64,000 bases of DNA. Origin: Obrimoposthia wandeli (taxonomy: Eukaryota). Under the pieces are notes generated by a model. It did no database searches. It worked only from the letters and a program-made list of their open reading frames with translations, and was not told where the DNA came from. Where the stretch lies: NCBI GenBank assembly GCA_977020255.1, contig CDROCS010005135.1, positions 1 to 64,000 on the forward strand. Direction: 5' to 3'. Each line of letters starts with the position of its first letter. Position 1 is the stretch's first letter. Position numbers and translations under genes: made by a program. Shown in pieces: positions 17,132 through 30,367 of this stretch.

Positions 17132-17132
17132 A

Positions 17133-17282: not shown

Positions 17283-17291
17283 TCAAATACC

Positions 17292-17492
17292 TTATTTTTT
17301 CTCTTTTCTAAACGTATCCCATAAACCAATCAGCATACCGACAATGGCAGGAACCATACCGCCAACCTGTGCGCCAGTGTCATTAACCGTGACGGTTGCT
17401 AAATCTGTGTTGCCCGTAGCGACACCAATTGCGCCAGCGCCAAGAAGAATCAAACCCGTTTTAGTACTTTTTTGCGATAAATCGAACTTCAT
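17292..17492 (-). CDS. 66-aa phage membrane protein, putative holin/lysis factor
   Basis: Two hydrophobic segments and basic C-terminus RKEKK; downstream of the P5-like gene. Confidence 0.65.
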   Translation of the reverse strand: MKFDLSQKSTKTGLILLGAGAIGVATGNTDLATVTVNDTGAQVGGMVPAIVGMLIGLWDTFRKEKK

Positions 17493-17596
17493 AATAGTTT
17501 ACTCTTTTTTAATATTTTAATGGCATACGCGCCAAGGACTACAGCGGTTACGCTGACAACAATTCGCCTTAATGACTGTTGATTTTCTTTGGTCAT
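17489..17596 (-). CDS. 35-aa single-TM phage protein (not in ORF track)
   Basis: MTKENQQSLRRIVVSVTAVVLGAYAIKILKKSKLL*; ATGA overlaps with both neighbouring genes. Confidence 0.7.
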   Translation of the reverse strand: MTKENQQSLRRIVVSVTAVVLGAYAIKILKKSKLL

Positions 17597-18066
17597 GCCA
17601 GCTCTACACCTTCACGGACTGCACCAAAGGGATATTGCTTGCCAACTTCCATGCGCGCCATTGCCTGTAAGATTTTGGTCACGGTTTGGTTGTTGTTCAC
17701 ATTAATCGGTAGATGCTTGGAAATGCCCGTCCACTTGCTCACCATGTCAGCGTAATGATCTGAGTCATTCTCGTTGGTTGGTGCGAACGTATGCACGATG
17801 CTGTGGATTGTATTAATGCCTCGACGGTTGTAGCTTTTCAGGATTCGAGCGCCCGCACGAAAGCCGAATTTCACATGCGTAAACTCTTCAAAGGCTTTGT
17901 CATCATCGGTAACGCGCTCACCCTGCCAATGAGTTGTATCGCCTTTTGATTCACGAATATTCAACGGGTTGTTGTTGCGCTCACCGCGTGTTTTGCCTGT
18001 TACTGCTGTTGTGACTTTATCCATGATATTGCTCAAAATAAAGTTGTCAAAAAGCATTGCTGCCAC
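17593..18066 (-). CDS. PM2 P5-like protein (putative peptidoglycan hydrolase/endolysin); 5' end uncertain
   Basis: RGERNNNPLNIRES..WQGE..FEEF..GFRAGARILKSY..FAPTNENDS..Y resembles PM2 P5 (RGLRNNNPLNIKE) as recalled. Confidence 0.8.
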   Translation of the reverse strand: MAAMLFDNFILSNIMDKVTTAVTGKTRGERNNNPLNIRESKGDTTHWQGERVTDDDKAFEEFTHVKFGFRAGARILKSYNRRGINTIHSIVHTFAPTNENDSDHYADMVSKWTGISKHLPINVNNNQTVTKILQAMARMEVGKQYPFGAVREGVELA

Positions 18067-18129
18067 GGTATCCGATGGTCATCGATGGCGTTTCATGGTA
18101 AATGGTAAAGACCAATGCAGCCCCTACCG

Positions 18130-18343
18130 TACCAAGACCAATCAAAACTGGTTAAGTTTTTGAGGCACAAATATTCTGAAGGTTTGAGGGATATCGCGTA
18201 AGTTTAATATGGTCGGCGAACGTGTTATATCAATGCTTCAATGCCGTTTCGACTAGATGGTCAGCTTCAATTAACATCGGCTTTCGCACTTCACGTAGCA
18301 TGGCTAATCGGCATTCTGGGTGTATCTCACTTTTTTGAATCAT
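18130..18343 (-). pseudogene. Tail-fibre-assembly-chaperone-like small protein, frameshifted (3' end approximate)
   Basis: MIQKSEIHPECRLAMLREVRKPMLIEADHLVE then, in another frame, LRDIPQTF (R..R..LL...D / LRDIPQ motif). Confidence 0.5.
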
Positions 18344-19121
18344 CAATTAATCTCCGGCATAGAAAATAGTTTTCGAGGGTGGTCAAGGTATCCGGTAGCC
18401 ACAACAGGCAAGGCAATCAGCATTGAACCAGTAATTGAATTGGCAATTGGATGCGGGGATATATATCCTCCAAACCAACCATTTATTTACCAACCAGTTT
18501 AAAAGCGCCATTCCTGTTAACGCACCCATGCTTAAAACCTTTAGACCTGATTTAAGTTCGCCCGATTCAAGCTTAACGAAAGCCGCCATAGTTAAAATCG
18601 ATGCAACTGGAACTGCGGAACCAGAGATAGACGCATACTTGGGGTAAATAGTCCAAGAGGGCAAACTGGAACCAAAATCCCACTGCACACGAAACACATT
18701 GAAATTATTTCTATATGTACTTCCTTTTGAAATATTAAAATCAGGGAAATCTTTTCTAATATCACTTTCTATTTCACCAAGCAGCGTCAATTCATTGGCC
18801 GTTCGCTCTGGAGGGAATTGCGATATATTTTCCACTTGAGACATTGTTACTGCACTGTTAGCAATAATACCGTCAGGAATAGTCTGACCTTCAGCAATGA
18901 TCAGCCCTTGATTTTTGGTCAGAGAAATATTGGGTAACTGGTCTGTTGTTGGGCTGGTAATTGTTTGAAAATCAGCCGCATGTTTAGCAATTAAGCCGCC
19001 ATCCTTTGGTGTCCCATCAAGGCGCATCGTTAGTCTGCATCACACGGATAGCCCCGCCCTTGATGCTGTCCAATAAGTTACGGGCTTCCGTAACCATGTT
19101 GCCTAACACTTCGTAACTCAT
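18343..19121 (-). pseudogene. Putative receptor-binding/fibre-like protein with at least two frameshifts
   Basis: MSYEVLGNMVTEARNLLDSIKGGAIR in one frame, the 18383-19027 ORF in the middle, GWFGGYISPHP..LIALPVVATGYLDHPRKLFSMPEIN* in another frame; TGATG-type coupling at both ends. Confidence 0.55.
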
Positions 19122-19392
19122 AATTCCTGTTGCTCCAATTCATCGGCTACGGCTTCAAGGCGTGGTAGCGTGTTACTTGCCACACTGCTTGCTAAGTCGT
19201 AAACGTCGTTATCTGTTTCAAAAATATGGCGGTGCAGGGTCATCAGCGTTGCACCTATGGCTACCTGATTGCTGTAAACGTCCTGCATCATTTGCAACGC
19301 GTCAACCTGATCAGGTTGTAGGTTTTTAAGGTGCTCGTGCTGGGAGGGGTTCTTACTTCACGGCCTTCTCTCGACGCGGCATGATATGTCAT
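19118..19392 (-). pseudogene. Small virion-associated protein with one frameshift
   Basis: ATG at 19392; later frame PDQVDALQMMQDVYSNQVAIGATLMTLHRHIFE..ELEQQEL* whose stop overlaps the next ATG. Confidence 0.4.
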
Positions 19393-19965
19393 CTGCACTC
19401 CACCAGCGATTTTCAACGGGGTATTGCTGTTGTTGTACGCCCACAACTCACCACCGCCCGTGATTGTCATGCCTGCGGGTGCTGTTCGGTCACCCAGAAC
19501 AGGAAGCCCAACCACTGCCGATACATTCGAATCCCCTAACATTGCCTCAGCTTCAACCTCGCTGATATTTTGGATAATGGCTTCCAGCCGTGTGACTGAC
19601 GCATTAAGCAAACGTTGCTTGGTATTGGGGTTAATAACCAAATGGTCACGGCTAATAAAGCGCCGTTTCCTTCCATGGCATGGAGTACGAATTTCAATAT
19701 CGTCATTGAATCGCAACCACCATGGCAGGTGTGGTAAATCAAATTATGTTTGGTAAACAACGCGAATCGGGGTTGCATGAGGGTTAGATAATTCCAACTC
19801 TTTGAAGTCACCAATTTCTAAGGTGTCGCCCGCATCAATGCGGATACGTTCACCGTTGTCACTGTTAACATTCACATACTCTTGAGCTTCACGAAGAATA
19901 ATCCACTTATAAGAAGCCACACCGAAACGCTTTATTTCTTGAGGTTGTAAAGTAATAATATTCAC
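19288..19965 (-). pseudogene. PM2 P1-like penton/spike protein, interrupted by an in-frame stop at 19744
   Basis: ORFs 19744-19965 and 19288-19716 are in the same frame; beta-rich; RLLNASVTRLEAIIQN resembles P1 ELLPEDASRNRASIKS; located after the P10-like gene. Confidence 0.5.
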
Positions 19966-20646
19966 TTACGCCCCCTTAATCGCAAATGCGACCATACCGA
20001 TACCCATTGCAGCCGCGACCGCCATCGACACCTTTGACATTTCCCCCGCGCTCCCTGTCTGAGAGCGTGAGGCGGTATTTTCTGCCATTGCCAAGGCTGC
20101 ACGTGCATTCCCTCATTCGCTGAAGCGTTGCACGAAGCCAGATACAACGTTTTCAGCATTACGACGGCTTGCATCAATAGCGGATTGGCTAATATCAGCG
20201 TTTTTATCAAGTGCCTTTTCACCAAACCCCAATGCCTTGAATAATGATTCCTGACCACTGTCTAAGGCACTTTTTAAGGTATCCTTATTCGCTTCAATGG
20301 ACTTTTCTGCCAGTGAGTTTTGAGCCTTGATTGACTCTTTGCTGACGTTCTCATTTGACTTAATCGCATCACGACCAAAATCAAAGGATTCACCAGCTCA
20401 TTCGATTTTGGAGGGCGTCCTGACCGGAATGCCTCCTTTATGGCGGCACTGTTACTCGCCATTGCATTTTTGGCAATTTCAGATGCAGCCCTGACTGAGC
20501 CGTGGTCTGTCATATTGACGTTAATGCTTGAATCGTTCGCCCCACTGATAACAACACCTAAATTGTCACCAGAAATGGCACTTGTACCGTTGGTATTGGT
20601 TGCGCCTTTGCATGTTCTTACTTGAACTACTGCCACCGCCACCCAT
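19966..20646 (-). pseudogene. PM2 P10-like membrane/DNA-delivery protein, frameshifted
   Basis: MGGGGSSSSK start, TNTNGTSAISGDNLG, TDHGSV motif, Ala/Ser-rich helical middle and C-terminal TM VSMAVAAAMGIGMVAFAIKGA*, recoverable only with about three frame changes. Confidence 0.65.
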
Positions 20647-21056
20647 CAGCTTCCCTCCAAATACAATGACATTACCGTGTCATGCTCGGTCGTTTCCGTC
20701 TGAACAAAACCAAATGACTGTAGAATCGCAGTCATGCCAGTGCGTACAGTGTGGTACTTGATAGCGCGGTATCCCTGAGACTTCACCGCGTCAATGATAT
20801 AAGGGGCAACGCTCACCAAACCCTTACCCGTCAACGCGAGAATCAGATAATCGTTATCATCGGTAACGAAACCAACGAAACGCACAGACACATCTTTTCC
20901 TATCACTTGGTACATGCTGGCTTGTTTAGAGAGAACAAGCTCTTTCGTGATATCGAACTCTGCTTTACAGTTTTTCACACCGTTAAAAGCACGTTTAATC
21001 AACGCGAATTGAGCTTGAATATCAGCACGAGTGGGTTTTAATAGAATGAATTTCAT
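20646..21056 (-). CDS. Phage protein, possible degenerate GNAT-like fold
   Basis: 136-aa ORF translationally coupled between the P8-like and P10-like genes; GKGL..SQGYRAIKYHT..LQSFGF pattern. Confidence 0.6.
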   Translation of the reverse strand: MKFILLKPTRADIQAQFALIKRAFNGVKNCKAEFDITKELVLSKQASMYQVIGKDVSVRFVGFVTDDNDYLILALTGKGLVSVAPYIIDAVKSQGYRAIKYHTVRTGMTAILQSFGFVQTETTEHDTVMSLYLEGS

Positions 21057-21262
21057 TTTTTAAACACCATCCAAGCCATTGCGATTGCCAACACGATAAA
21101 CGGCATATTTTGAAGAGGACCGCCACCGAAGTTAATCGACCCATTCTTGATACCGCCAATCGAGTTGGTACCCGTTGCCTCCGACGGACCCGCTGCACCA
21201 CCGCCTGCGCTGATAGGCATTGAACCGCCAGCACTTAAACCACCACCGATACCCGGTATCAT
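21053..21262 (-). CDS. PM2 P8-like membrane protein
   Basis: Gly-rich N-terminus, GSINFG motif and C-terminal TM ending in KK, as in PM2 P8 (GGINFG..LVIKRK). Confidence 0.75.
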   Translation of the reverse strand: MIPGIGGGLSAGGSMPISAGGGAAGPSEATGTNSIGGIKNGSINFGGGPLQNMPFIVLAIAMAWMVFKK

Positions 21263-21408
21263 GATTTAGCCCCCCACACGCGATAAGCCGCATAACAACC
21301 GCCACCGATTGCCACCGCTTTCAACAATTGTGTTGTTTTAGAACCAGTAAAAAAACCAGCCCCAAACGACACACCCCCAGTCAATAACAGAATTGGAATT
21401 AATGGCAT
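21259..21408 (-). CDS. 49-aa PM2 P4-like membrane protein (not in ORF track)
   Basis: MPLIPILLLTGGVSFGAGFFTGSKTTQLLKAVAIGGGCYAAYRVWGAKS*; AGGGGG RBS; ATGA overlap with the P8-like gene. Confidence 0.65.
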   Translation of the reverse strand: MPLIPILLLTGGVSFGAGFFTGSKTTQLLKAVAIGGGCYAAYRVWGAKS

Positions 21409-21416
21409 AACGCCCC

Positions 21417-21695
21417 CTAGCTCTTGACCGCTAATACAACCACAAGCAGTAGCACCACCGCCCCGATACCTCCACCGACATAGAGCAAGGTTTTATCGTC
21501 TGTACGAGGAATGTAATTCCCCGTCACTGCATTGCCGTTGTTGTCTTTCACTGGCGTTGTCGGTTGCTGTGTTGTTCCTGCGTTCGCGCTGTTGTCAGGT
21601 TTTTTGGTCTTACCCTCAACAAGGTTATCGAATCCCTCACCAACGCTATCTAACATGCCAGAACCGAAATTACTCAGGTCATCAAAAAAGCTCAT
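21417..21695 (-). CDS. PM2 P3-like membrane protein
   Basis: 92 aa, amphipathic N-terminus, low-complexity linker, C-terminal TM (KTLLYVGGGIGAVVLLLVVVLAV); directly after the MCP gene. Confidence 0.75.
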   Translation of the reverse strand: MSFFDDLSNFGSGMLDSVGEGFDNLVEGKTKKPDNSANAGTTQQPTTPVKDNNGNAVTGNYIPRTDDKTLLYVGGGIGAVVLLLVVVLAVKS

Positions 21696-21703
21696 AAGCC
21701 CCC

Positions 21704-22507
21704 CTAAACAAGATCAGGACGAACAATCAAAACTGACTCAACAATGATAGAAATTGAGCCGCAAGGTTCAGACGTTTTCACCGTGAACTTAAGCTCTGAG
21801 TTGTGCACCGTACGGAAAAGCTCATCGATGTAATAACCGCGCATGATTGGGTCAAAGTGGTAGCAGTTTGCTTGCCAGAAACGACGATTACGCTTTGCGC
21901 GCATATCTTCTAATGCACGTGTTGAATCATGGACTTTGACAAAGTCACGGTGAATTTGCAGTGAGTGCACTTTGTCACTGAGAAAGTGCATACGGCGCAC
22001 CATGTGAAGCGGACCAGAAATCAAGTCAAGAAACTCGTTCTCTGTTGAACTTGCTTGCATGGTCTGGCGTTTGATTTGCGGAACAACCACACGAGCACCT
22101 TGACCTGCTGATACGGTTGCCCATGCCTGTAGTTTGATGGCGGGTGCATTCTCTTGGCTGGTTTCTGCGACTTCAATTTCTAGCGTGATGTTGTCACCGC
22201 TTTCCGTTACCAGACCAGTGTAAGCCATGCCGTTTTTGGTTTTTGCGGTGATATCCATTAATGGAATTGCGAAAAATCCGTCCGTTTGGGTCAGACCTTT
22301 GTAGGCTTCCAGCTTTTTGATTAGCTCACCGTCTAGAACAATGATTTCATCAGCATTCAGCGTGATAGAAACGCGTTTTAATTGGGCTGCACTGAGGTTT
22401 GTTTCGAGAAAAATTTCGTCATACGTTGGGCCAATCGGAATGGTTAACGTCGCTTTTTCACCGTAGCCAGTACCCGTAAATGAATTCAGCTTAGTTGGAG
22501 CAGTCAT
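21704..22507 (-). CDS. Double-jelly-roll major capsid protein (PM2 P2-like)
   Basis: 267 aa, beta-rich; KLNSFTGTGYGEKATLTIPIGPTYDEI aligns by eye with PM2 P2 LNSIPNVAAGNSCSIKLPIGQTYEVI; conserved gene position. Confidence 0.8.
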   Translation of the reverse strand: MTAPTKLNSFTGTGYGEKATLTIPIGPTYDEIFLETNLSAAQLKRVSITLNADEIIVLDGELIKKLEAYKGLTQTDGFFAIPLMDITAKTKNGMAYTGLVTESGDNITLEIEVAETSQENAPAIKLQAWATVSAGQGARVVVPQIKRQTMQASSTENEFLDLISGPLHMVRRMHFLSDKVHSLQIHRDFVKVHDSTRALEDMRAKRNRRFWQANCYHFDPIMRGYYIDELFRTVHNSELKFTVKTSEPCGSISIIVESVLIVRPDLV

Positions 22508-22521
22508 AGTGATTTACTCCC

Positions 22522-22635
22522 TTAACCGATTTGGTCTTCAACGGCATCAACGTTATTTGATGCCCAGACAACGCCAGCTGCGACAAGCAGTGCAATCACC
22601 GCTGTGACTGCATACCCTTTAGTTTTTGCATTCAT
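22522..22635 (-). CDS. 37-aa PM2 P7-like membrane protein (not in ORF track)
   Basis: MNAKTKGYAVTAVIALLVAAGVVWASNNVDAVEDQIG*; single TM immediately upstream of the MCP gene. Confidence 0.65.
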   Translation of the reverse strand: MNAKTKGYAVTAVIALLVAAGVVWASNNVDAVEDQIG

Positions 22636-22781
22636 GTTTATTAGCTCTCTGTATAAACGTGTTTAAGAGCCAATAGGAAAACAGGTGATTTGGTTTTAAG
22701 GCAAACGAAATAAAGCAAGGAAGGCTATAGGTTAAATAACGAGGTAGGGGGGCTTTATTTCATCTCTTTTTTCTAACGTGC

Positions 22782-22812
22782 AAAATACACCTATCACTGA
22801 TAGGTGTATTTT
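22782..22812. terminator. Perfect inverted repeat, terminator of the cargo gene
   Basis: AAAATACACCTATCA-c-TGATAGGTGTATTTT, 19 nt after the cargo stop. Confidence 0.75.
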
Positions 22813-22831
22813 CATTATGGGAAATGTAAAG

Positions 22832-24250
22832 TTAAATATGAACAGCTTCGATGATAATAATATTATCATCATTTGATAAATTAAATTTACTCATAGAGCT
22901 TCTAACTTCATCTGCTTTCTTTAAGCTATAGCAAATTATAATAACAACTTGATGATTCACATCACCTTGGCTACGTTTGAATAAATAGCTATCAAGGTGA
23001 GGGTTACTTGCCATTTTAGTTTCAAATGAATTATTTAGTTTGAAGTTGTTCTTCAAGCAATTATTCGCTTTGAGTAATATGCTAAACAGCATTTTTATTT
23101 CTTTTGCATTGGTGATTCTTTTGTCTTTAATGAATAGTGGAGCTGAACTCTTGTTTAATATATCTTTCAAAATAATTGATTTTTCACGAAGATTAGATAA
23201 GCTCTTTACTTTCAAATTAAAAAAATCAGTACCTTGCAACTTAACAATCAATTCACTACCATTATTTAGGAATAGTGATTTAGCATTAAACATTCTCTTT
23301 TTAGTTAATTTTGAAGCTTCTTTTTCACCATCACTTTCAGTTTTATACTTTATGTAATAGTCTAAATATGATGGGTATTTTTTGATTAAATCATTCATAA
23401 CCATTCGATGGTAATCAGTTCTCTTTCCCGTAGAAAGGAGCATGCTTCTATCATAGAAATCAAAAACATTTTTAGCAAAGTTACTATCAGATATATGACT
23501 CAAAACTTTTTTGAATTGAGCGTGACTTTTAATTACATCATTTTTACATATCCAAGTATTATCTTTTGTTAAAAGTTCTATTGGACTTAAAATGACATAT
23601 TCGCCGTCATGAATAGGCATGTGGTATTTTTTATCAACCCAAACCTTATTGTCATAATCAAAAAGTGCTCGTTTAACCAATACATCTTTGCAAAATTTAT
23701 TATCAATAAAAGTCTTTGCGAAGTATTCCGTGTATGAAAGAAGGTAATCTTTTATTATATTGGTTGTGAAGTCACTAATTTTATCTTTGCCTATTTTATC
23801 TTGGCATAAGCAAAACTTTTCTATATGGACAGTATTTGAATTTTCATTACTACCAAATTTTTTAAATATATTGTTAATGCTGAAGTTTAACTTGTTCGCA
23901 AAATCACTAGCTAAACCACTCCCGTTATTACCATCAACACTAAAGCCTAGCCAGTTTTCTTTTACTTCGTGAAACATGAACCATTCATTTAAGTTTTCTT
24001 CACTAATATCATCACTCGCATTATCTTGAAGAAATATCAAGTATTTAACAATATCATCATGCAGGTGTTGATAGTTTTTATTTTTATAAATTAAAAAGGG
24101 ATCTATAAACAAAGGAATATCATTTATTAATGAAATATCAAAAGCACCATATTCATCAATAATTTCCCTTGAAACGTCAAAAAAGTCAGAGAAATAAATA
24201 CTTGGTTTATCCAGTATCACAGGAACATCTAAATCAACACATTCACTCAT
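22832..24250 (-). CDS. AT-rich prophage cargo (moron) protein, 472 aa; candidate anti-phage nuclease-fold protein
   Basis: Much lower GC than flanking phage genes; motifs YFSDFF, GAFDISLINDIPLFIDPFL, IGKDKISDFTTNIIK and C-terminal FETKMASN. Confidence 0.75.
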   Translation of the reverse strand: MSECVDLDVPVILDKPSIYFSDFFDVSREIIDEYGAFDISLINDIPLFIDPFLIYKNKNYQHLHDDIVKYLIFLQDNASDDISEENLNEWFMFHEVKENWLGFSVDGNNGSGLASDFANKLNFSINNIFKKFGSNENSNTVHIEKFCLCQDKIGKDKISDFTTNIIKDYLLSYTEYFAKTFIDNKFCKDVLVKRALFDYDNKVWVDKKYHMPIHDGEYVILSPIELLTKDNTWICKNDVIKSHAQFKKVLSHISDSNFAKNVFDFYDRSMLLSTGKRTDYHRMVMNDLIKKYPSYLDYYIKYKTESDGEKEASKLTKKRMFNAKSLFLNNGSELIVKLQGTDFFNLKVKSLSNLREKSIILKDILNKSSAPLFIKDKRITNAKEIKMLFSILLKANNCLKNNFKLNNSFETKMASNPHLDSYLFKRSQGDVNHQVVIIICYSLKKADEVRSSMSKFNLSNDDNIIIIEAVHI

Positions 24251-24345
24251 GTAAAACCTCAGAAAAACATATAGACCTGCTAAATCTATATGAATTTACG
24301 TGCAAATCCAACAGATGGAATAGTGTGTTGATGCATTTCGTGTGG

Positions 24346-24375
24346 ATTATAATAAATCAGAGAGTTAGTTCACAA
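24346..24375 (-). promoter_or_regulatory. Putative sigma70 promoter of the cargo gene
   Basis: Minus strand TTGTGA-N18-TATAAT, about 95 nt upstream of the ATG. Confidence 0.5.
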
Positions 24376-24393
24376 AATCAGCACTTTCCATTA

Positions 24394-25059
24394 TTACCAT
24401 CGAATAATATCTTTCTTCCACGCCTTACCATCCTGAAGAATGTATTCAAGCTTTATCAACGGGATAACCTCACTAGCAGGTATTCCTGTCTTCCTTTGGA
24501 TGTAATGCGCACTATCATCAGCTTTTTGCATCATCACACACGCATATTGGCAGTTATCAATGATCGTCTTTGAGACTTCCTGACCACGCTGAAACATATT
24601 GATGGTGTGAATGTTGTATTTCCGTCCTAGCCTTAACAGCTTGCCATGGTAGCCTGTTGCTTTGCCTGTGGTGTGACTGTGCTCGGCAACTTCTTCACAA
24701 ATTACCTTTAAGGGTTTGGCATGTTTACCATCACCGACACCCCATGCAATTGAGCAGAAACGGTCAAAGTCTTCTTCTGTGGTTTCCCGTTTCGGGTAAT
24801 ACGCAATTTTAAATCCTTGCTTGGTTTTACGCCCCGCAAGAATGGCGATAGCAAAATCACGAAGGTTGGAATAGCTGCGAACGACACGCCCCGCGAGTTT
24901 GCCTTGGTAATCGTTAAGAGGGTCAAAAATCACCACTTGGTCGGTTGCCTTAACAAACAGCTTTTTGGCTGCGGAGGTTTTCCCGCAGCCAGACATGCCA
25001 ACCGCATACGCATGATGATTATCTAGCGTATTGTTTTGGTTAACAGGTTGGAGTTTCAA
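24394..25059 (-). CDS. Genome packaging ATPase (PM2 P9/A32-like, FtsK-HerA superfamily)
   Basis: Walker A GMSGCGKT, Walker B VICEE, GRKYNI arginine-finger motif, FQRGQEVSKTIIDN; 221 aa, no TM. Confidence 0.85.
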   Translation of the reverse strand: MKLQPVNQNNTLDNHHAYAVGMSGCGKTSAAKKLFVKATDQVVIFDPLNDYQGKLAGRVVRSYSNLRDFAIAILAGRKTKQGFKIAYYPKRETTEEDFDRFCSIAWGVGDGKHAKPLKVICEEVAEHSHTTGKATGYHGKLLRLGRKYNIHTINMFQRGQEVSKTIIDNCQYACVMMQKADDSAHYIQRKTGIPASEVIPLIKLEYILQDGKAWKKDIIRW

Positions 25060-25529
25060 GCCGCCTCCTTGTCATTATTATCGTCATTCGCTGCCGTCTT
25101 CGATTTTATGTCTTCTAGCTTTAATTTCCTGACTTGCATCATGCTACTGAACCCTAATAAACCAATCGCAAACAATGCCATGATTTCGTCCATATACGGT
25201 TCTAACCACGGTGGCGGTTTACCGCCGTATTTCACGATCAAAGGCGCAACCTTATAGGCTACGTTTTCGGCTTGGTCGACATCAAATTTAAAGTCTTTGT
25301 GTACTGCCATTTTAAGTGTTGATTCAGTTGCCATTAACCCCATGAACACGATGCCAGCAGCGGCTTCAATCGACATGGCTTCTGGCTCATCTTTCGGTTT
25401 AACGTCGGTTTGAGTGGGATCAAAATCAACATCATCATTAAAACTATTGGCAAAGCGTTTTTCATCATCTTCTGAATGATATTCAATTTGCTCGGTTTCG
25501 TCTGGCTTGATTGGCTCTTTGATTTCCAT
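25056..25529 (-). CDS. Phage protein with acidic N-terminus and hydrophobic helices, coupled to the ATPase
   Basis: 157-aa ORF, KYGGKPPPWLEPYMDEI, ATGA overlap with the ATPase gene. Confidence 0.7.
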   Translation of the reverse strand: MEIKEPIKPDETEQIEYHSEDDEKRFANSFNDDVDFDPTQTDVKPKDEPEAMSIEAAAGIVFMGLMATESTLKMAVHKDFKFDVDQAENVAYKVAPLIVKYGGKPPPWLEPYMDEIMALFAIGLLGFSSMMQVRKLKLEDIKSKTAANDDNNDKEAA

Positions 25530-25553
25530 GCTGTTTCCTATAGGTTTGTTGGG

Positions 25554-26045
25554 TTAGTTGAACTTAACGATTGCACCGCCAGTAAGCCCGCCAAGGACAA
25601 TGCCGCAAAGCACAGCACCCCAACCAATACGCTTTTGTTGCGGTTCTTTTTCGGTTTGATTATCGGTTTTGGTTCGGTCACTGGTTTGCTCTGCAATGCA
25701 GGTGGTTGCTGGCTTGTCTGGTTCAATGATTGGGTTTTTATTGCCTCCGCTTTCACTGCTTGTTTCTGCTGATGCTGGCGGTGTTTCTTTAATGATGCTG
25801 GATTCTTCGGGTTGCGTTTGCTCACTGGTGATTAACTCCGCTTTGGTTACATGGAATTGATTGAATACACGTTGAACTGGCTCGCCAGTACGTTGGTCGG
25901 TGCCACAGGTATCGCAAATCGAATACAGGAATCTTGCCCGTTTACCCCGCGAACGGTGCAAGGTTCGAACATCACCACATTCGCAGCGTTGACCGCCTGC
26001 GGTCGGATTGGTTGAGGCGCGTGTTGGCCATCCGTTGTTATCCAT
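25554..26045 (-). CDS. Zn-ribbon protein with C-terminal TM (possibly PM2 P14-like regulator)
   Basis: CECG..CDTCG N-terminus, disordered linker, TM IGWGAVLCGIVLGGLTGGAIV. Confidence 0.65.
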   Translation of the reverse strand: MDNNGWPTRASTNPTAGGQRCECGDVRTLHRSRGKRARFLYSICDTCGTDQRTGEPVQRVFNQFHVTKAELITSEQTQPEESSIIKETPPASAETSSESGGNKNPIIEPDKPATTCIAEQTSDRTKTDNQTEKEPQQKRIGWGAVLCGIVLGGLTGGAIVKFN

Positions 26046-26220
26046 TCTGTTTTCCTTCCAATGTATTTAAGCGTTTATTAGTAATGTTGATGTAGCGAAT
26101 TAATGCCTGAATCAATGGCTTAAATGTTTTACCCATCAATGAATTACTAAATGATTCACCCGCATCACTGATAGTTTGTGTATTTTCTTCTGCTGCTTTT
26201 TGTAACGCTTCTACTGACAC
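26038..26220 (-). CDS. Small phage coiled-coil protein
   Basis: 60-aa ORF with AAGG RBS, overlapping the next gene. Confidence 0.55.
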   Translation of the reverse strand: MSVEALQKAAEENTQTISDAGESFSNSLMGKTFKPLIQALIRYINITNKRLNTLEGKQNG

Positions 26221-26232
26221 TATTTTTTTACC

Positions 26233-28092
26233 TTATATTCGGATTGATTGGATAAAGGACTTACTACTGTGCCCCTTGGGCGGGTGAAGGTGGTTGTAAG
26301 GCTTACTGGGCTCTAACTGCGTACAGTTATTGACACAAGTCCAAGGTAGAGCAGGAGACGAATCAAGAGCCAAAGAATCAACATCAAGAGCTTTAGGCGC
26401 ATCAGCTTTCACTAAACGCCATTCATGCTCATGTGTGAACACAGTGATGCCCGCACCATGCAGCCCGATTATTTTCTCAATGGTTTCGCCGTATCGGTTT
26501 TCGTCTAATTCTTTGTAAGGTTTGATAGGTCGCTGGCTCTGCTTAACGCGGTGACCGCCCATGTAATCGAAATAGGCTGAAAAGAAACCCCAATCAGCCG
26601 CACGACGGGCTTTTTCAAACAAGCCATACTCTTGCTCATCTTGAATTCTGCGCAGCTCTCGCCATACCGTGACACTCGGTACTTTTTGAAATTGGAATTG
26701 ACGGAAACTGAATGTGCGCGACCATGCCGTAACGTTATTGACAACCTCGGTTAACTTGACGGTTTTTGCGTCTAAGTCGCTTGCATCACCAAGACCAAAG
26801 CCGTCGATATTCTTAGAAATGTATTTGGCGATATACGCAACTGCATCACCTTTTGATGGGTCGATTAATTTGATATCAATACGGGCTTTCATTGCCTTAG
26901 TTTTTGGCATGCCGTCAGGAAAATATAATTCCCCAGAATCACGCTGCATTTGGTAATAACGCAGTAGGGCTGTGAACTTCCCAAATTGCTCCAATGGCAT
27001 GAAAAACACTGCATGCCAGTGGGGTGTGCCATCAACATGCGGCTCAACAACACGCATCCCGTAATAATCTAAACCACGACGACCCGCAGCACTTCTGAAA
27101 CGCTCCCACGACAAAGAAAGCCATTGATGCGCAGCTTTTGCGCCTGTTTGGTTCCAGTTAGGGTTTTCTATCCAAAAATTGCCGCGCTTTTTCAAACGAT
27201 GGTATTTACCTGGCGAGGTCATGGTGACGAATACGGCAACATGTGTTTGCTCGTCGGCATATTCCTGACACCCAGACATGCGGGTCATCAATTCATTTCG
27301 ACGGTTTACAGGGTTAGCCACTGACGCGTCATGCACGTCTTTCATGCTGAATTGTTCACCCAATTCATTCTCGACCACCATCATTTCAAGCCATGCGCTT
27401 TGTTGTTTCTGTCTATCTTTGAGCCATTGGCACGCAGAATAAGACGCATACGGGCTGGTATGTGAAGACACCATGCCAGCCGCACGACGGGCATTTTCAA
27501 AAGCTGCGGTAACTTGGCGGGTAATGGATCGCTTCCAGACTGCCGCATCAATGGCACGACCAATAATGCCGAAATACACATCATCGTCTTTGCCTTCTCT
27601 GGGTAGCATTTGAGGCATCCATAACCCTAAGCCTACAAACTCATTTATTAACCTAACGGCTTCTAATGGGGTCATGCCTTTATCACATGCAATTTGAAAG
27701 TGCATATGTGCGCGCCCTGCTAGTTCATCAGCAAGACGGGCACACTTGAACTCTGTATTCACTCGATAAAACGGTTCTGGTAAAACAGCCAATGCCGCAT
27801 GGGCTGCCTTAGAGCGAGATTCGATAAATGACAAGGCTCTATCGAGCCCGTACTTACGCAATCTCATGGCGGCTGAATGGTCTAGATATCGCTTAATATC
27901 GGACGGTAACGATAATTGCAAACACGCCTCGGTACTAAAGGCGAGCACCTTGCCTAACATGCTGTCAGGGGTGTTACACCACGGATTCACATCACTGAAT
28001 TGTTGTGATTCCTTTTCGGCAAACTCGCCTAAAGCTTCGTAGGTTTTAGGCGCATGTTTGCGAAGGTAGGCGAGGGGGTTTTTAATGCTCAT
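26233..28092 (-). CDS. Rolling-circle replication endonuclease (P2 gpA-like HUH Rep)
   Basis: FVTMTSPGKYH, YYGMRVVEPHVDGTPHWH (HUH), YIAKYISKNIDG (two catalytic Tyr), RQFQF, PSVTVWRELRR, PWTCVNNCT. Confidence 0.92.
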   Translation of the reverse strand: MSIKNPLAYLRKHAPKTYEALGEFAEKESQQFSDVNPWCNTPDSMLGKVLAFSTEACLQLSLPSDIKRYLDHSAAMRLRKYGLDRALSFIESRSKAAHAALAVLPEPFYRVNTEFKCARLADELAGRAHMHFQIACDKGMTPLEAVRLINEFVGLGLWMPQMLPREGKDDDVYFGIIGRAIDAAVWKRSITRQVTAAFENARRAAGMVSSHTSPYASYSACQWLKDRQKQQSAWLEMMVVENELGEQFSMKDVHDASVANPVNRRNELMTRMSGCQEYADEQTHVAVFVTMTSPGKYHRLKKRGNFWIENPNWNQTGAKAAHQWLSLSWERFRSAAGRRGLDYYGMRVVEPHVDGTPHWHAVFFMPLEQFGKFTALLRYYQMQRDSGELYFPDGMPKTKAMKARIDIKLIDPSKGDAVAYIAKYISKNIDGFGLGDASDLDAKTVKLTEVVNNVTAWSRTFSFRQFQFQKVPSVTVWRELRRIQDEQEYGLFEKARRAADWGFFSAYFDYMGGHRVKQSQRPIKPYKELDENRYGETIEKIIGLHGAGITVFTHEHEWRLVKADAPKALDVDSLALDSSPALPWTCVNNCTQLEPSKPYNHLHPPKGHSSKSFIQSIRI

Positions 28093-28268
28093 TGCGCAGA
28101 CCTTGATTGCAGTTGGTTCGCTCTTACTCTAATGCGCTCTGACATTTGAATCTTTTTGCGGTCTTGCTTGGTTTTAATTCGCTGTAACTCACAGCGAATT
28201 TTACGAATGTTATTCAGCCCTGAAAGGCACTGTTTTTTGGTAGGAAATTCAAAATCTTTGGTATTCAT
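28089..28268 (-). CDS. Small basic phage protein
   Basis: MNTKDFEFPTKK.. after GGGCGC RBS-like sequence; ATGA-type overlap with rep. Confidence 0.55.
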   Translation of the reverse strand: MNTKDFEFPTKKQCLSGLNNIRKIRCELQRIKTKQDRKKIQMSERIRVRANQLQSRSAQ

Positions 28269-28278
28269 AGTGCGCCCC

Positions 28279-28530
28279 TTAGATTGATGATTTCCAATTA
28301 GTATTTTCTTTCGCTTGCTCGTCTGCATACTTTTCAAGCGCCAACATATTGATAAATACCCGTCCACGACGAAGTCCAACACGTTGCATTACAGGTAATT
28401 TCCCGTTTTTTACCTGCCCCTTAACTGCATCCAAACTTAACCCTACTAAGTCTGCGAACTTCTCTATCGTCACAAATGGCGCATAATTACCTTTTATGAC
28501 TCCTTCCGACTCTTTATAATGTTCTATCAT
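28279..28530 (-). CDS. Cox/Apl-like regulator and excisionase
   Basis: APFVTIEKFADLVGLSLDAVKGQVKNGKLPV..GRVFINMLAL winged-HTH pattern; divergent from the repressor. Confidence 0.75.
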   Translation of the reverse strand: MIEHYKESEGVIKGNYAPFVTIEKFADLVGLSLDAVKGQVKNGKLPVMQRVGLRRGRVFINMLALEKYADEQAKENTNWKSSI

Positions 28531-28637
28531 TTAAATTATCCTTAAATACCCACTATTGACACTACGTCAACCTAAGTGGTCAGTAAGGCGAATTTACTCC
28601 CTTTTATTACCTACTGTCAACCTTAAAGGTCATCATT

Positions 28638-29381
28638 ATGAAGGAATGGTTTTTAACATCAGAGTTGTTAGATCATGAGGGAATGCCAAACTCTCGTCAG
28701 GCGATTGCAAAAAAAGCAAAAAGAAACAATTGGTTAAAGCGAAAGGCTCAAGGGGAGGGGCGCTCTCTTGAGTACCATATTTCCAATCTCCATGAAGATA
28801 TTCAAAAGTCGCTAATTGTGAAGTACGGCGAAGATTTCGAAATAAAGAACATACCTAGTGTCATCGCCCAGCTAAAAGAAAATGCAGTCAAATATGAAGA
28901 CGATGAGAAACCGTTAAGTAACGTATCAAAAGAAATACCACTGGACGAAATAAGCGATTGGTGCATCTTACCTGTTTATGATGTTCACGCGGCAGCAGGA
29001 GCAGGAACATTGATTCAATCTGAATACCAAATAGGTACATTTCAAATACCATGTGTATTACTGCATGAATACGGATTGAACGCAGAAAATAGCTCTATCA
29101 TTTTTGTGGATGGTGATTCTATGGAGCCAACATTGAGCCACAAAGACAAACTGCTTGTTGATATTCAAGAGTATTATCATCCTGTAACTAACGGTGTTTA
29201 TGTCATTCGAATTGATGATGCAGTTTATGTAAAGCGTTTACACTGGGATATTGAAAACGGTCTTTACAACATTATTTCTGATAACTCGAAATACGCACCT
29301 TTCAAAATTGACCACAACAATGGGCGCAATTTTAAGATTATCGGGAAAGTTATCACCATCATAATGAAGCCAGTGTTATGA
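28638..29381 (+). CDS. Prophage repressor: Mu-type HTH fused to an S24 (LexA/CI) peptidase domain
   Basis: N-terminus EWFLTSEL..EGMPNSRQAI..W.KRK..GEG..EYHISNL; Ala-Gly cleavage site (AAAGAG), VDGDSMEPTL (Ser), VYVKRL (Lys). Confidence 0.85.
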   Translation: MKEWFLTSELLDHEGMPNSRQAIAKKAKRNNWLKRKAQGEGRSLEYHISNLHEDIQKSLIVKYGEDFEIKNIPSVIAQLKENAVKYEDDEKPLSNVSKEIPLDEISDWCILPVYDVHAAAGAGTLIQSEYQIGTFQIPCVLLHEYGLNAENSSIIFVDGDSMEPTLSHKDKLLVDIQEYYHPVTNGVYVIRIDDAVYVKRLHWDIENGLYNIISDNSKYAPFKIDHNNGRNFKIIGKVITIIMKPVL

Positions 29382-30367
29382 GTATTAAAAAAGAAGATAC
29401 CAAGTGGCTAGTTGATATTCGCCCGTCAGGAAGAGACGGTAAGCGATATAGGCGAAAATTTGAAAGAAAAGCAGAAGCTCTAGCGTATGAAAAACATATT
29501 CTAGCCACTGCACACAGTAAAGAGTGGCTAGGGCTTCCAGCAGACACGCGCCGATTATCAGAACTCATTGAGATATGGTGGAAAAAATCAGGGCAATTCA
29601 AACGCACCGCTGATAATTACCAGAAAAAAGTAAGCCTTATTTGTCGCGAACTGGAAGACCCTCCAGTCAATACAGTAAATCACAAATTACTGTCTAATTG
29701 GGTGCTTTATAGATTAGAGAAAGGTCAGAAACCGTCGACTATTCGACGGCTTATAAAATCATTAAGTAATATTTTTACAGTAACAATTGATTCAGGGGAC
29801 TACATAGGTGAAAACCCACTAACAGGGCTTAAACTCCCCACCGTAAAACAACCTGATATGACATATCTTAATGACAGCCAAATAGACCAACTTCTTGAAG
29901 CCGTTGCAGAACATGACGAACTCAATAAGGTAGTTGAAATTTGCCTGTCTACTGGCTCACGATGGCGAGAAACGATCACATTACGAACAAGCAATCTTTC
30001 GCCTTATAAAATCCGCTTTACCAATACAAAAACAGATAAGCCTCGAACAGTGCCTATTAGCCAAGAGCTCTATGAAAAAATTTACCCAAAAAGTGGGGCA
30101 AGTGTATTTTCTTATGACCCTCAACAAGATCTATACGACATTCTGAATAAACTAGACTTTGGTTTACCCAAAGGACAAAAAGCACATGTACTAAGGCACA
30201 CATTTGCTAGTCACTTTGTTATGGGAGGAGGGGATATTTTAACGTTACGTGACATTCTAGGACATGGCGATATCAAACAAACAATGACCTATGCTCACCT
30301 TGCACCAGACCACCTAACAGACGCCGTGAAATTTAATCCACTATCAAAAAAAAGGCAGTCACAATGA
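29378..30367 (+). CDS. int: Tyrosine integrase, P2/HP1 family
   Basis: WLVDIRPSGRDGKRYRRKF arm-binding domain; TGSR, HVLRH, LGH, TMTYAH catalytic residues. Confidence 0.95.
   Translation: MSIKKEDTKWLVDIRPSGRDGKRYRRKFERKAEALAYEKHILATAHSKEWLGLPADTRRLSELIEIWWKKSGQFKRTADNYQKKVSLICRELEDPPVNTVNHKLLSNWVLYRLEKGQKPSTIRRLIKSLSNIFTVTIDSGDYIGENPLTGLKLPTVKQPDMTYLNDSQIDQLLEAVAEHDELNKVVEICLSTGSRWRETITLRTSNLSPYKIRFTNTKTDKPRTVPISQELYEKIYPKSGASVFSYDPQQDLYDILNKLDFGLPKGQKAHVLRHTFASHFVMGGGDILTLRDILGHGDIKQTMTYAHLAPDHLTDAVKFNPLSKKRQSQ

What the first reader, a model, noticed from the sequence alone, without database searches (positions are those of the whole stretch)
22640..24393. Self-contained AT-rich moron between packaging ATPase and capsid genes: candidate anti-phage system and possible defence hotspot of tailless prophages
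Seen: a 472-aa ORF at about 25-28% GC in the lines I counted, versus about 50% in a sampled flanking phage line. It has its own TTGTGA-N18-TATAAT promoter and a perfect 15-bp inverted-repeat terminator, and it splits the ATPase from the P7/MCP genes. N-terminal motifs (YFSD.F, GAF.ISLIND.PLFIDPFL, IG.D.ISDFTTN.IK) match a widespread uncharacterised family as I recall it. C-terminal FETKMASN resembles the E-x-K of a PD-(D/E)xK nuclease, but the expected upstream PD motif is not evident, so it may be degenerate. Known: P2/P4 elements carry defence genes at fixed hotspots. Inference: PM2-like prophages may have an equivalent hotspot here, and this is a single-gene defence protein expressed in the lysogen.
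Basis: partly seen in the sequence, partly recalled or inferred. Interest (0 to 1): 0.82.

Follow-up and report, generated by a model that had tools for sequence, protein, structure and literature searches.

The report
Nuclease-dead immune-family gene in tailless prophage
A small tailless prophage of a Vibrio-like bacterium has picked up a self-contained, AT-rich gene from a large uncharacterised family that looks like a bacterial immune protein, but this copy has lost the DNA-cutting site typical of the family, so how it acts is open.

Summary
A 472-aa ORF (22832-24250, minus strand, 28% GC against 43-46% in the phage flanks) sits between the packaging ATPase and the P7/capsid genes of a 13.5-kb PM2-like prophage. 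It has a promoter-like site and a perfect 15-bp inverted repeat.

The protein is a divergent member of the DUF8370/DUF8371 family: at least 1,117 clusters at 50% identity, no solved structure, no fold match, no curated name. Its N-terminal half matches the untested PADLOC candidate PDC-M36A.

Typical members end in a PD-(D/E)xK nuclease; 154 of 189 carry the full D, E-x-K, Q-x3-Y set. All 12 long members examined have lost that set, and the ten scanned by Pfam or PADLOC carry TIR, SIR2, caspase, CHAT or nucleoside phosphorylase instead. This points to a constant sensor with exchangeable effectors.

The window's clade keeps only E-x-K, lacks two core strands and has no replacement effector, yet evolves at dN/dS about 0.1.

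A defence role is plausible but unproven. The hotspot idea is only weakly supported: 73 of 79 related elements have an empty interval, and the other cargoes there are unrelated (a lectin-domain ORF, a 205-aa ORF of unknown family, stretches without a long ORF). The accessory hotspot of tailless Vibrio prophages already published lies elsewhere. Two late genes of this prophage look broken.

The parts
24346..24375 (-). Promoter-like site of the cassette: -35 TTGTGA (24375-24370), 18-nt spacer, -10 TATAAT (24351-24346)
   Evidence: 10 of 12 matches, best in the region, though the site count equals the shuffle expectation. The -35 is conserved in the three closest cassette copies, and DNA homology starts at 24380.
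24251..24345 (-). Leader of about 90 nt with GAGG (24260-24257) 6 nt upstream of the ATG
   Evidence: Sequence read. The leader is conserved with the P. damselae and L039 copies.
22832..24250 (-). 472-aa ORF, a divergent member of the DUF8370/DUF8371 family
   Evidence: 751 or more homologues; closest 81%, P. damselae; 1,117 cluster representatives; PADLOC PDC-M36A, 2.8e-19, N-half only; dN/dS about 0.1.
23546..24250 (-). Residues 1-235: conserved N-terminal module (DUF8370 core), putative sensor or regulatory domain
   Evidence: 49% mean identity to 44 canonical members, against 22% for the rest of the protein. Invariant polar residues across 49 sequences include D50, H64, E95, N108, H142, E144, K145, D156, S159, D160 and N164. 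AF2 pLDDT is mostly above 85. No PDB or BFVD fold match.
23216..23545 (-). Residues 236-345: helical middle region
   Evidence: AF2 model, long helices 236-339; 22% identity to canonical members.
22832..23215 (-). Residues 346-472: remnant of the DUF8371 PD-(D/E)xK nuclease domain. It keeps E410-x-K412. It lacks the aspartate strand, the Q-x3-Y helix motif and the C-terminal tail.
   Evidence: Alignment and column shares. A profile of canonical C-termini still matches residues 341-397 and 410-470. The canonical model has five strands in this domain (the first three, beta1-beta3, in a row) and the query model has three.
22782..22812 (-). Perfect 15-nt inverted repeat (1-nt spacer), 20 nt after the stop codon; likely transcription terminator of the cassette
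   Evidence: the 57-nt stretch containing it folds at -17.8 kcal/mol, z = -5.6; 0 of 200 shuffles fold as well. It is not shared with other cassette copies.
22838..24380 (-). Extent of DNA homology with the cassette copies outside phages (81% to P. damselae L002, 80% to L039)
24394..25059 (-). Packaging ATPase (PM2 P9 homologue), upstream neighbour; the cassette begins about 15 nt after its stop codon
   Evidence: phrog_2666; hits PM2 structural protein P9.
22522..22635 (-). 37-aa membrane ORF, the counterpart of PM2 gene VII (P7)
   Evidence: 73-79% identity to the same small ORF in relatives; PM2 order P9-P7-P2.
21704..22507 (-). Major capsid protein P2 (double jelly roll)
   Evidence: PF18628 2.7e-43, PF25513 2e-33; phrog_8536.
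17004..30498 (.). PM2-like prophage (order Vinavirales), about 13.5 kb, bounded by a 19-bp direct repeat (17004-17022 and 30480-30498) just downstream of bioD
   Evidence: repeat; integrase 29378-30367, S24 repressor 28638-29381, Cox-like 28279-28530; bioC and bioD to the left; Rep GPA 26233-28092.
19962..20642 (-). Homologue of PM2 gp j (a 230-aa late gene in relatives), read in two frames here: one apparent frameshift
   Evidence: counts only.
19363..19965 (-). Homologue of a 201-aa late gene of relatives, with one in-frame stop here
   Evidence: counts only.

Best explanation
A mobile cassette of promoter, leader and ORF, followed here by a hairpin, was inserted right after the stop codon of the packaging ATPase. 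In PM2 this is the junction between the early-right operon and the late promoter region.

The cassette encodes a stand-alone protein of the DUF8370/DUF8371 family. I read that family as a single-protein conflict (immune) system. A conserved N-terminal module of about 340 residues, probably a sensor or switch with an invariant polar pocket, is coupled to an effector. The effector is normally a Cas4/RecB-like PD-(D/E)xK nuclease. In lineages where the nuclease site has decayed, the effector is a fused TIR, SIR2, caspase/CHAT or nucleoside phosphorylase domain.

The copy in this prophage belongs to a small Vibrionaceae clade. This clade keeps the N-terminal module intact and under strong purifying selection. 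Its nuclease domain has lost the aspartate strand, the helix glutamates and the Q-x3-Y motif, and no other effector has been gained.

Most likely it is still a conflict gene expressed from its own promoter in the lysogen: exclusion of, or defence against, other mobile elements. It would act without cutting DNA at the canonical site, for instance by binding its trigger or target through the N-terminal module and the nuclease remnant.

Shown: the anatomy, the family membership, the loss of catalytic residues, the effector-exchange pattern, the purifying selection and the horizontal origin. Inferred: the immune role, sensor as opposed to enzyme for the N-terminal module, expression in the lysogen, and the non-catalytic mode of action.
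For: - Family and candidate status: 751 or more homologues; 1,117 representatives; PDC-M36A, 2.8e-19; PDCs come from embedding within BREX, DISARM and type I RM loci.
- Effector fusions. TIR_2 in 8 of 40 members; also CHAT, Peptidase_C14, EAD7, PNP_UDP_1, SIR2_2 and SEFIR; PADLOC ThsA-like and caspase matches.
- Nuclease identity of the canonical C-terminus: PDDEXK_9 in 9 of 49 members, plus single weak hits to Cas4, DpnII-MboI and Tox-REase-7. Alpha-beta-beta-beta-alpha-beta topology, with D at the start of strand 2, E-x-K in strand 3 and Q-x3-Y in the next helix.
- Exchange pattern: 154 of 177 members of 560 aa or less have the full D-E-K-Q-Y set, against 0 of 12 longer members. Ten of those 12 were scanned and carry an alternative effector domain.
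- Degeneracy in the query clade.
- Constraint: dN/dS of 0.08-0.12 in all three domains.
- Mobility and island contexts: the smpB-adjacent island in P. damselae; a HipBA and NERD neighbourhood; recombinases, SIR2_2 and a PDC-S25-like neighbour; gene GC below contig GC in most viral contigs.
- Absent from the same interval in 73 of 79 related elements.
Against: - No member of the family has been tested; PDC-M36 is an untested candidate. The full-length PDC-M36A match belongs to a paralogous branch (L001:7908-9341), and the query matches only the N-terminal half of that model.
- This copy has neither a working nuclease site nor a substitute effector, so a sensor-plus-effector scheme leaves it without an obvious output.
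- The invariant polar residues of the N-terminal module would equally fit an enzyme.
- There is no structural or sequence similarity to any solved protein to anchor a mechanism.
- The promoter and terminator are predictions, and promoter-like hexamers are no more frequent here than in shuffles.
- Motif calls in divergent C-termini depend on alignment quality.
Confidence: 0.5

Rival explanations
1. Counter-defence decoy or sponge. The phage carries an effector-less copy of a host immune sensor. The copy soaks up the activating ligand, or poisons oligomers of a host DUF8370 nuclease, and so helps the phage or the lysogen's other elements.
For: The sensor-like module is intact while the nuclease is dead and there is no replacement effector. 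The gene sits directly after the last gene of what is the early-right operon in PM2, with no terminator in between, so it could also be read early in infection.
Against: - The closest nuclease-intact relatives found are only 36-40% identical. Those that carry names come from distant phyla; a decoy is expected to resemble a target in its own host range.
- The same clade sits in chromosomal islands beside toxin-antitoxin and NERD genes, not only in phages.
- None of 50,697 phage records holds a detectable relative.
Confidence: 0.12
2. Partner-dependent subunit. The nuclease-dead protein works only together with a paralogue or another host protein that supplies the output, as in a two-gene PDC-M36-type system.
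For: In four of five P. damselae contexts the 81% homologue lies in tandem, about 660 bp downstream of a 477-aa paralogue. That paralogue is the full-length PDC-M36A match, at 1.5e-49.
Against: - One complete P. damselae chromosome (L002) has the homologue without the paralogue.
- The 64-kb window holds no second copy.
- The paralogue itself has no DUF8371 nuclease.
- No neighbour is conserved across contexts, and no PDC-M36B-type match was found next to any copy.
Confidence: 0.13
3. Free-standing selfish nuclease gene (homing-endonuclease-like). It invaded the gap between two conserved phage core genes and is now decaying.
For: It is an AT-rich, self-contained cassette between the two most conserved genes of the virus. 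The family's usual C-terminus is a nuclease, and catalytic residues are lost here.
Against: - dN/dS is about 0.1 across the whole protein, including the dead domain, which argues for retained function.
- Copies sit in unrelated, non-homologous sites.
- Family members are fused to TIR, SIR2 and caspase domains, which is not a homing-endonuclease trait.
- Other cargo at the same junction is unrelated.
Confidence: 0.05
4. Lysogenic-conversion or housekeeping-type function unrelated to conflict, for example a nucleic-acid-binding regulator or an enzyme that benefits the host; or neutral hitch-hiking cargo.
For: - No function is known for DUF8370 or DUF8371, and the fold matches nothing known.
- Other cargo at this junction is not defence-like: H-type lectin.
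- Some family members lie among ordinary metabolic genes.
Against: The repeated fusion to hallmark immune effectors and the PADLOC candidate match are hard to reconcile with a housekeeping role. The patchy, island-borne, low-GC distribution points the same way.
Confidence: 0.17

Closest known systems
Pfam DUF8370 (PF28123) + DUF8371 (PF28130) proteins
   Same: The N-terminal module is clearly homologous: E = 1e-85 to canonical members, and every column that is invariant in the 49-sequence alignment is also kept in the query. Precomputed Pfam lists PF28123 for the four closest relatives. Overall length and three-part layout are the same.
   Different: PF28130 is not detected in this clade. The nuclease domain lacks about 16 residues that hold the aspartate strand, about 5 residues that hold Q-x3-Y, and the C-terminal tail. 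Both Pfam entries are domains of unknown function, so membership says nothing about mechanism.
PADLOC phage defence candidate PDC-M36 (gene A)
   Same: The N-terminal 230 residues match model PDLC04597 at 2.8e-19. The tandem neighbour of the closest homologue in P. damselae is a full-length match.
   Different: Only half of the model is matched. No B gene was found. The system is an untested prediction from guilt-by-embedding (bioRxiv 10.1101/2024.01.29.577857).
Cas4/RecB-type PD-(D/E)xK nucleases (D, E-x-K, Q-x3-Y)
   Same: Canonical family members have the alpha-beta-beta-beta-alpha-beta core, with D, E-x-K and Q-x3-Y each in 44 of 44 sequences, and weak PDDEXK_9 and Cas4 hits. The query keeps the E-x-K strand.
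   Different: The query lacks strands 1 and 2, the aspartate and Q-x3-Y, so it does not meet the catalytic definition. Foldseek found no nuclease match with the query model.
Single-protein immune sensors with exchangeable effector domains (for example Avs/STAND-type proteins and ThsA-like SIR2/TIR proteins; the EAD-linked conflict systems of Kaur et al. 2020, cited from my own knowledge)
   Same: A constant module is combined with alternative TIR, SIR2, caspase/CHAT, PNP, EAD7 or nuclease domains.
   Different: There are no NTPase motifs and no similarity to those sensors. The constant module is a fold without known relatives. The window's copy has no active effector at all.
Accessory-gene hotspot of tailless Vibrionaceae prophages (Steensen et al. 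2024, PMC11630473); P2/P4 defence hotspots (Rousset et al. 2022, cited there)
   Same: Small temperate elements carry variable, often defence-related cargo at a defined locus. The close relative PQ189340 carries PD-T4-5.
   Different: The published locus lies near the prophage border, beside a regulator or recombinase. The present cassette is in the core IX-VII-II block, a site filled in only 7 of 80 elements, by mostly non-defence cargo.
Morons of temperate phages (an extra gene with its own promoter and terminator between conserved genes; concept of Hendrix and colleagues, cited from my own knowledge)
   Same: Different base composition, own promoter-like site and hairpin, insertion between two conserved genes, and absence from relatives.
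   Different: Described mainly for tailed phages. Here the host element is a membrane-containing tailless virus, and the insertion is at an operon junction.

Membership tests
DUF8370/DUF8371 family | Homology of the N-terminal DUF8370 module | tested here: met
   phmmer gives E = 1e-82 to 1e-85 to canonical members over residues 17-469. 42 invariant columns are shared. PF28123 is precomputed for the relatives at 65-81% identity. The local Pfam copy lacks these models.
DUF8370/DUF8371 family | C-terminal DUF8371 domain | tested here: inconclusive
   PF28130 is not listed for the query clade. A profile of 44 canonical C-termini still matches residues 341-397 and 410-470. The domain is homologous but truncated.
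PD-(D/E)xK nuclease (catalytically competent) | Metal-binding aspartate at the start of core strand 2 | tested here: not met
   D is present in 44 of 44 canonical members. The query clade has N or K at the aligned column, and the preceding loop is deleted.
PD-(D/E)xK nuclease (catalytically competent) | (D/E)-x-K in core strand 3 | tested here: met
   E410 and K412. The five clade members have E or D at the first position and all have K.
PD-(D/E)xK nuclease (catalytically competent) | Core alpha-beta-beta-beta-alpha-beta fold | tested here: not met
   The query model has three strands in this domain. The canonical P0009 model has five, the first three (beta1-beta3) in a row. There is no Foldseek nuclease match at E below 0.3.
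PD-(D/E)xK nuclease (catalytically competent) | Q-x3-Y motif of the Cas4/RecB branch | tested here: not met
   Q and Y are each present in 44 of 44 canonical members and are deleted in the query clade.
PADLOC PDC-M36 | Full-length match to the gene A model | tested here: not met
   The match covers query residues 21-247 and profile positions 9-229 of 457.
PADLOC PDC-M36 | Presence of the partner gene(s) of the multi-gene system | tested here: not met
   Both neighbours in the window are phage core genes. No PDC-M36B match was found among the neighbours of homologues that were scanned.
PADLOC PDC-M36 | Demonstrated anti-phage activity | not testable with these tools
   PDC systems are described as untested candidates.
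Moron | Absent from the same position in close relatives, and of different composition | tested here: met
   The interval is 250-270 bp in 29 of 35 loci and at baseline (about 255 to about 375 bp) in 44 of 44 phage records, against 1,886 bp here. GC is 28%, against 45% for the neighbouring phage genes.
Moron | Own promoter and terminator | tested here: inconclusive
   A consensus-like promoter is conserved among cassette copies, and a strong hairpin follows the ORF. No transcript data are available.
Defence hotspot of a phage family | The same site holds different cargo in many related elements | tested here: inconclusive
   7 of 80 elements are occupied, with at least four unrelated cargo types, all of lower GC than their flanks. 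An extra ORF is also reported there in two P. profundum prophages.
Defence hotspot of a phage family | Cargo enriched in defence systems | tested here: not met
   The other cargoes are an H-type lectin ORF (L006, L017), a 205-aa ORF of unknown family (L053) and inserts without long ORFs. The one other cargo ORF scanned against PADLOC, the L006 lectin ORF, had no hit.

The most novel reading that the evidence does not exclude
DUF8370 is the shared sensor of a large single-protein immune family, unrecognised so far, whose effector has been exchanged repeatedly (nuclease, TIR, SIR2, caspase/CHAT, nucleoside phosphorylase). This tailless prophage carries an effector-less derivative that acts as a decoy or sponge. 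That would make it a phage-borne counter-defence evolved from a defence gene, or else a defence that works purely by binding, without any enzymatic effector.
Probability: 0.12. Interest if true: 0.75.

Novelty: new variant of a known kind. Interest (0 to 1): 0.5.

Why it matters
- The family is large (at least 1,117 clusters at 50% identity), spread from candidate-phyla bacteria to actinobacteria and vibrios, and has neither a name nor a structure. The pattern found here gives a concrete, testable architecture for it. An intact nuclease site occurs only in short members. It is degenerate in all 12 long members examined, and the ten of these that were scanned carry TIR, SIR2, caspase, CHAT or phosphorylase domains.
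- The prophage copy is a natural dead-effector variant under strong constraint. That raises the question of what a sensor without an effector does.
- Accessory cargo of tailless prophages is not confined to the published border hotspot. The early/late operon junction inside the conserved ATPase-P7-capsid block is a second, rarely used insertion point.

Tried and rejected
- Local Pfam, NCBIfam and PDB sequence searches with the protein gave nothing useful. The family profile against PDB gave nothing.
- Foldseek with a good AF2 model (pLDDT 84) found no match against PDB or BFVD; the best E-values were 0.34 and 0.07.
- tblastn of the protein against 50,697 phage records gave no match.
- The exact-sequence look-up of the window's protein is not on record. 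Host proteins occur only on short metagenome contigs, so the host species was not identified.
- Literature searches for PDC-M36, DUF8370, DUF8371, PF28123 and PF28130 found no papers.
- No conserved partner gene was found. Neighbours differ in every context and are unrelated to one another. PADLOC scans of neighbours gave no PDC-M36B.
- Decaying pseudogene: rejected, because dN/dS is about 0.1 in all domains.
- 'The -35 hexamer belongs to the phage backbone': considered because relatives have TTTGTGA right after the ATPase stop. The P. damselae copy shares the sequence from 24380 onwards, so it travels with the cassette. The shared heptamer may mark the junction.
- An eight-sequence MCP alignment that included PM2 was too divergent for the metagenome scan. 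A six-sequence one worked.
- One paper reading failed because a term was too short.

Declaration: my script printed raw hmmsearch output that includes a short profile-consensus line, and the alignment tools printed consensus lines of their own. The consensus line first drew my attention to the C-terminal D / E-x-K pattern, before I turned to column shares. Every conservation figure and every conclusion in this report was then computed from aligned natural sequences and column shares; none rests on a consensus line.
Full report
**1. What is there**

The window holds a PM2-like tailless prophage (order Vinavirales) of about 13.5 kb. It is bounded by a 19-bp direct repeat at 17004-17022 and 30480-30498, just downstream of bioC and bioD. 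Its parts are:
- on the plus strand, a tyrosine integrase (29378-30367) and an S24 repressor (28638-29381);
- on the minus strand, a Cox-like gene, a GPA-type replication initiator (26233-28092), a packaging ATPase (24394-25059), a 37-aa P7-like ORF (22522-22635), the double-jelly-roll capsid protein P2 (21704-22507) and further late genes.

PM2 itself has the same P9-P7-P2 order, with a 134-bp gap after P9. Krupovic & Bamford 2007 place the late promoter region in that gap and assign P9 to the early-right operon (PMC1950889).

Between the ATPase and P7 lies the 472-aa ORF, 22832-24250 on the minus strand.

**2. The observation checks out**

- Composition: ORF GC is 28.2% (GC3 24.7%), against 45.0% for the ATPase, 45.8% for the MCP and 43-45% for the rest of the prophage.
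- Reality of the gene: shuffles of this AT-rich stretch never gave more than 131 stop-free codons.
- Promoter: the TTGTGA-18-TATAAT site is at 24375-24346. Promoter-like hexamer pairs are as frequent in shuffles (11 against 11.7), so the match alone proves little. However, DNA homology (81%) to a copy in Photobacterium damselae runs from 24380 to 22838. It covers promoter, leader and ORF, and the -35 is kept in the three closest copies.
- Ribosome-binding site: GAGG precedes the ATG by 6 nt.
- Terminator: 20 nt after the stop codon lies a perfect 15-nt inverted repeat (22812-22798 / 22796-22782). The 57-nt stretch that contains it folds at -17.8 kcal/mol, z = -5.6. This hairpin is not shared with the other copies.

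**3. The family**

- Size: the protein has 751 or more homologues in the word-indexed search and 1,117 cluster representatives at 50% identity in the exhaustive search.
- Pfam: precomputed labels are DUF8370 (PF28123) for the N-terminal part and DUF8371 (PF28130) for the C-terminal part of typical members of about 490 aa.
- Named hits: the local Pfam copy and NCBIfam gave nothing of use: no NCBIfam hit and only a sub-threshold GerPC match in Pfam. PHROGs gave two families of unknown function. PADLOC matched PDC-M36A at 2.8e-19 over the N-terminal half only. PDC systems are 145 untested candidates found by embedding within known systems.
- Structure: no solved structure is related by sequence. 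An AF2 model of good confidence (pLDDT 84, pTM 0.84) matched nothing in PDB or BFVD.
- Spread: named members come from Photobacterium, Mycolicibacterium, Peptococcaceae, Aromatoleum, Bacteroidota and candidate-phyla bacteria.

**4. Architecture and the effector-exchange pattern**

In 44 canonical members the C-terminal domain carries the following, each in 44 of 44 sequences: two helix glutamates, an aspartate after a G-R/K-G-P loop, E-x-K, and Q-x3-Y.

The AF2 model of canonical member P0009 (pLDDT 85.9) shows the PD-(D/E)xK core. The aspartate starts strand 2, E-x-K lies in strand 3, and Q-x3-Y lies in the following helix. Nine of 49 members also hit PDDEXK_9 weakly, with single weak hits to Cas4, DpnII-MboI and Tox-REase-7.

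Longer members add other domains: TIR_2 (8 of 40 scanned), SEFIR, SIR2_2, Peptidase_C14, CHAT, EAD7 and PNP_UDP_1. They also give PADLOC ThsA-like and caspase matches.

A census of the five motif columns in all 189 fetched members that have a DUF8371-like hit gave:

| Length class | Members | Full D-E-K-Q-Y set |
|---|---|---|
| 560 aa or less | 177 | 154 |
| More than 560 aa | 12 | 0 |

. So in every long member examined the nuclease site has decayed. Ten of the 12 were scanned and carry another effector domain. This is what one expects if the nuclease is the effector of the canonical protein and the N-terminal module is the constant sensor or switch. The caveat is that motif calls in divergent C-termini depend on the profile alignment.

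**5. The window's clade**

The window protein and its four closest relatives (65-81% identity) keep every invariant N-terminal column. The N-terminal 235 residues are 49% identical to canonical members, against 22% for the rest of the protein.

In the C-terminal domain:
- about 16 residues holding the loop and the aspartate strand are missing;
- the aligned aspartate column is N or K;
- one helix glutamate column is A, and the other varies (N, D or E);
- about 5 residues holding Q-x3-Y are missing;
- the C-terminal tail is missing;
- only E410-x-K412 remains.

The model has three strands in this domain, where P0009 has five. There is no substitute effector.

Even so, dN/dS against the P. damselae and L039 copies is 0.08-0.12 in each of the three regions, at dS of about 1. 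The whole protein, dead domain included, is maintained by selection.

**6. Where the cassette lives elsewhere**

- In P. damselae the 81% homologue is in an island beside smpB, with integrase remnants. In four of the five contexts shown it lies downstream of a 477-aa paralogue that is the full-length PDC-M36A match (1.5e-49). That paralogue has no DUF8371 domain.
- The 65% relative lies between HipBA and NERD genes.
- Canonical members sit beside recombinases, SIR2_2, a PDC-S25-like gene or plasmid transfer genes. Some lie among ordinary genes.
- No neighbour is conserved, so the gene behaves as a stand-alone unit.
- Eleven IMG/VR contigs carry relatives. None is corticoviral, and the gene's GC is usually below that of its contig.
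- No deposited phage genome has a detectable relative.

**7. Is the ATPase-capsid interval a hotspot?**

| Set | Elements | Interval |
|---|---|---|
| Deposited Vibrio phage records | 44 | All at baseline: about 255 bp (30 close), about 310-375 bp (14 distant) |
| Genome, viral and metagenome loci holding both genes | 35 | 29 at 247-272 bp; one of these is L071, where a partial MCP match gave a nominal -17 bp |
| Expanded loci | 6 of the 35 | L006 736 bp, L017 686, L050 1,402, L052 1,125, L053 899, L061 452 |
| This window | 1 | 1,886 bp |

All expanded inserts have lower GC than their flanks. Where I aligned the junction (the window and L006), the insert starts right after the ATPase stop codon.

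Their content is mixed:
- an H-type-lectin ORF of about 100 aa in L006 and L017, 51% identical to each other (PF09458);
- a 205-aa ORF of unknown family in L053;
- inserts with no ORF longer than 76 aa in L050, L052 and L061.

Krupovic & Bamford 2007 noted an additional ORF in this block in two P. profundum prophages.

So the junction is a real but rarely used insertion point, filled in 7 of 80 elements, and it is not enriched in recognisable defence genes. The accessory hotspot that does carry defence systems in tailless Vibrionaceae prophages is already published (Steensen et al. 2024, PMC11630473). In close relatives it lies at the far end of the late operon, for example PD-T4-5 in PQ189340.

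**8. How it most likely works**

My best reading, at confidence about 0.5, is as follows. The cassette is a moron placed at an operon junction. Its own promoter can drive it in the lysogen, and its hairpin shields the activator-dependent late genes from read-through. The protein is a member of a single-protein conflict family with a sensor module and an exchangeable effector. This clade has given up DNA cleavage and acts by binding, through the N-terminal module and the nuclease remnant.

Rivals:
- a decoy or sponge that counteracts a host DUF8370 system (0.12);
- a subunit that needs a paralogue (0.13);
- a selfish homing-type nuclease gene in decay (0.05);
- a function unrelated to conflict, or neutral cargo (0.17).

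The evidence for and against each is in the dedicated fields.

**9. State of the prophage**

Compared with intact relatives (L041, L047), two late genes look broken in the window. The gp j homologue is read in two frames (one frameshift), and the following 201-aa gene has one in-frame stop. The element may therefore be defective, while its cargo is intact. Assembly error is not excluded.

**10. Verdict**

The feature is real and well delimited. The 'degenerate nuclease' reading is right. The defence reading is plausible at family level but untested. The hotspot reading is weak, and the broader idea is already in the literature.

Novelty lies in three things: the nuclease-dead, effector-less variant; the effector-exchange pattern of an unnamed family; and a second, minor cargo site in tailless prophages.

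Noticed in passing
window 17004-17022 and 30480-30498: A 19-bp direct repeat bounds the prophage. It contains a small stem-loop and lies right after bioD, so the element seems to have integrated at, and duplicated, the bioD terminator. This fits the report that tailless Vibrio prophages restore their integration site (PMC11630473).
   Followed up: partly
window 19962-20642 and 19363-19965 (minus strand): Two late genes of the prophage look broken relative to intact relatives: the gp j homologue has one frameshift and the next 201-aa gene has one in-frame stop. The prophage may be defective, or the assembly may be imperfect. blastn against the near-identical contig L041 shows 43 gap openings in 3.6 kb.
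   Followed up: partly
L008:7826-7860, and the same place in L007, L009, L015, L016 and L006: Relatives carry a strong GC-rich hairpin followed by a T-run (-17.9 kcal/mol, z = -3.8). It lies between the putative late-promoter region and gene VII, only about 15 nt before the P7 start. The window's element lacks it. Its role (attenuator, mRNA stabiliser or terminator) is unknown.
   Followed up: no
L006:1064-1354 and L017:5388-5690: Two other corticoviral elements (V. splendidus 12E03 and an IMG/VR contig) carry a small H-type lectin domain ORF (PF09458, just above Pfam's gathering threshold) at exactly the same junction after the ATPase stop. The two ORFs are 51% identical.
   Followed up: partly
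L050:3599-5000: A 1.4-kb insert at the same junction has no long ORF. It contains two direct copies of about 180 bp; their spurious 59-aa and 65-aa ORFs are 82% identical. This may be a small repeat element.
   Followed up: no
L001:7908-9341 and L001:10001-11419 (P. damselae): Two DUF8370 paralogues lie in tandem beside smpB. The first is a full-length PDC-M36A match without a DUF8371 domain. The second is the 81% homologue of the window's protein. One complete genome (L002) has only the second.
   Followed up: partly
L013:6802-7468: The packaging ATPase of a Moritella MAG element is matched in two overlapping pieces, which points to one apparent frameshift.
   Followed up: no
L016:5951-7094: The Vibrio caribbeanicus element has about 1.1 kb of extra sequence between the 157-aa-ORF homologue and the ATPase. 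This is another variable spot inside the early operon.
   Followed up: no
window 24376-24393 versus L008:7746-7760: TTTGTGA follows the ATPase stop codon both in cassette-free relatives and at the left edge of the cassette. The shared heptamer may be a microhomology at the insertion junction.
   Followed up: partly
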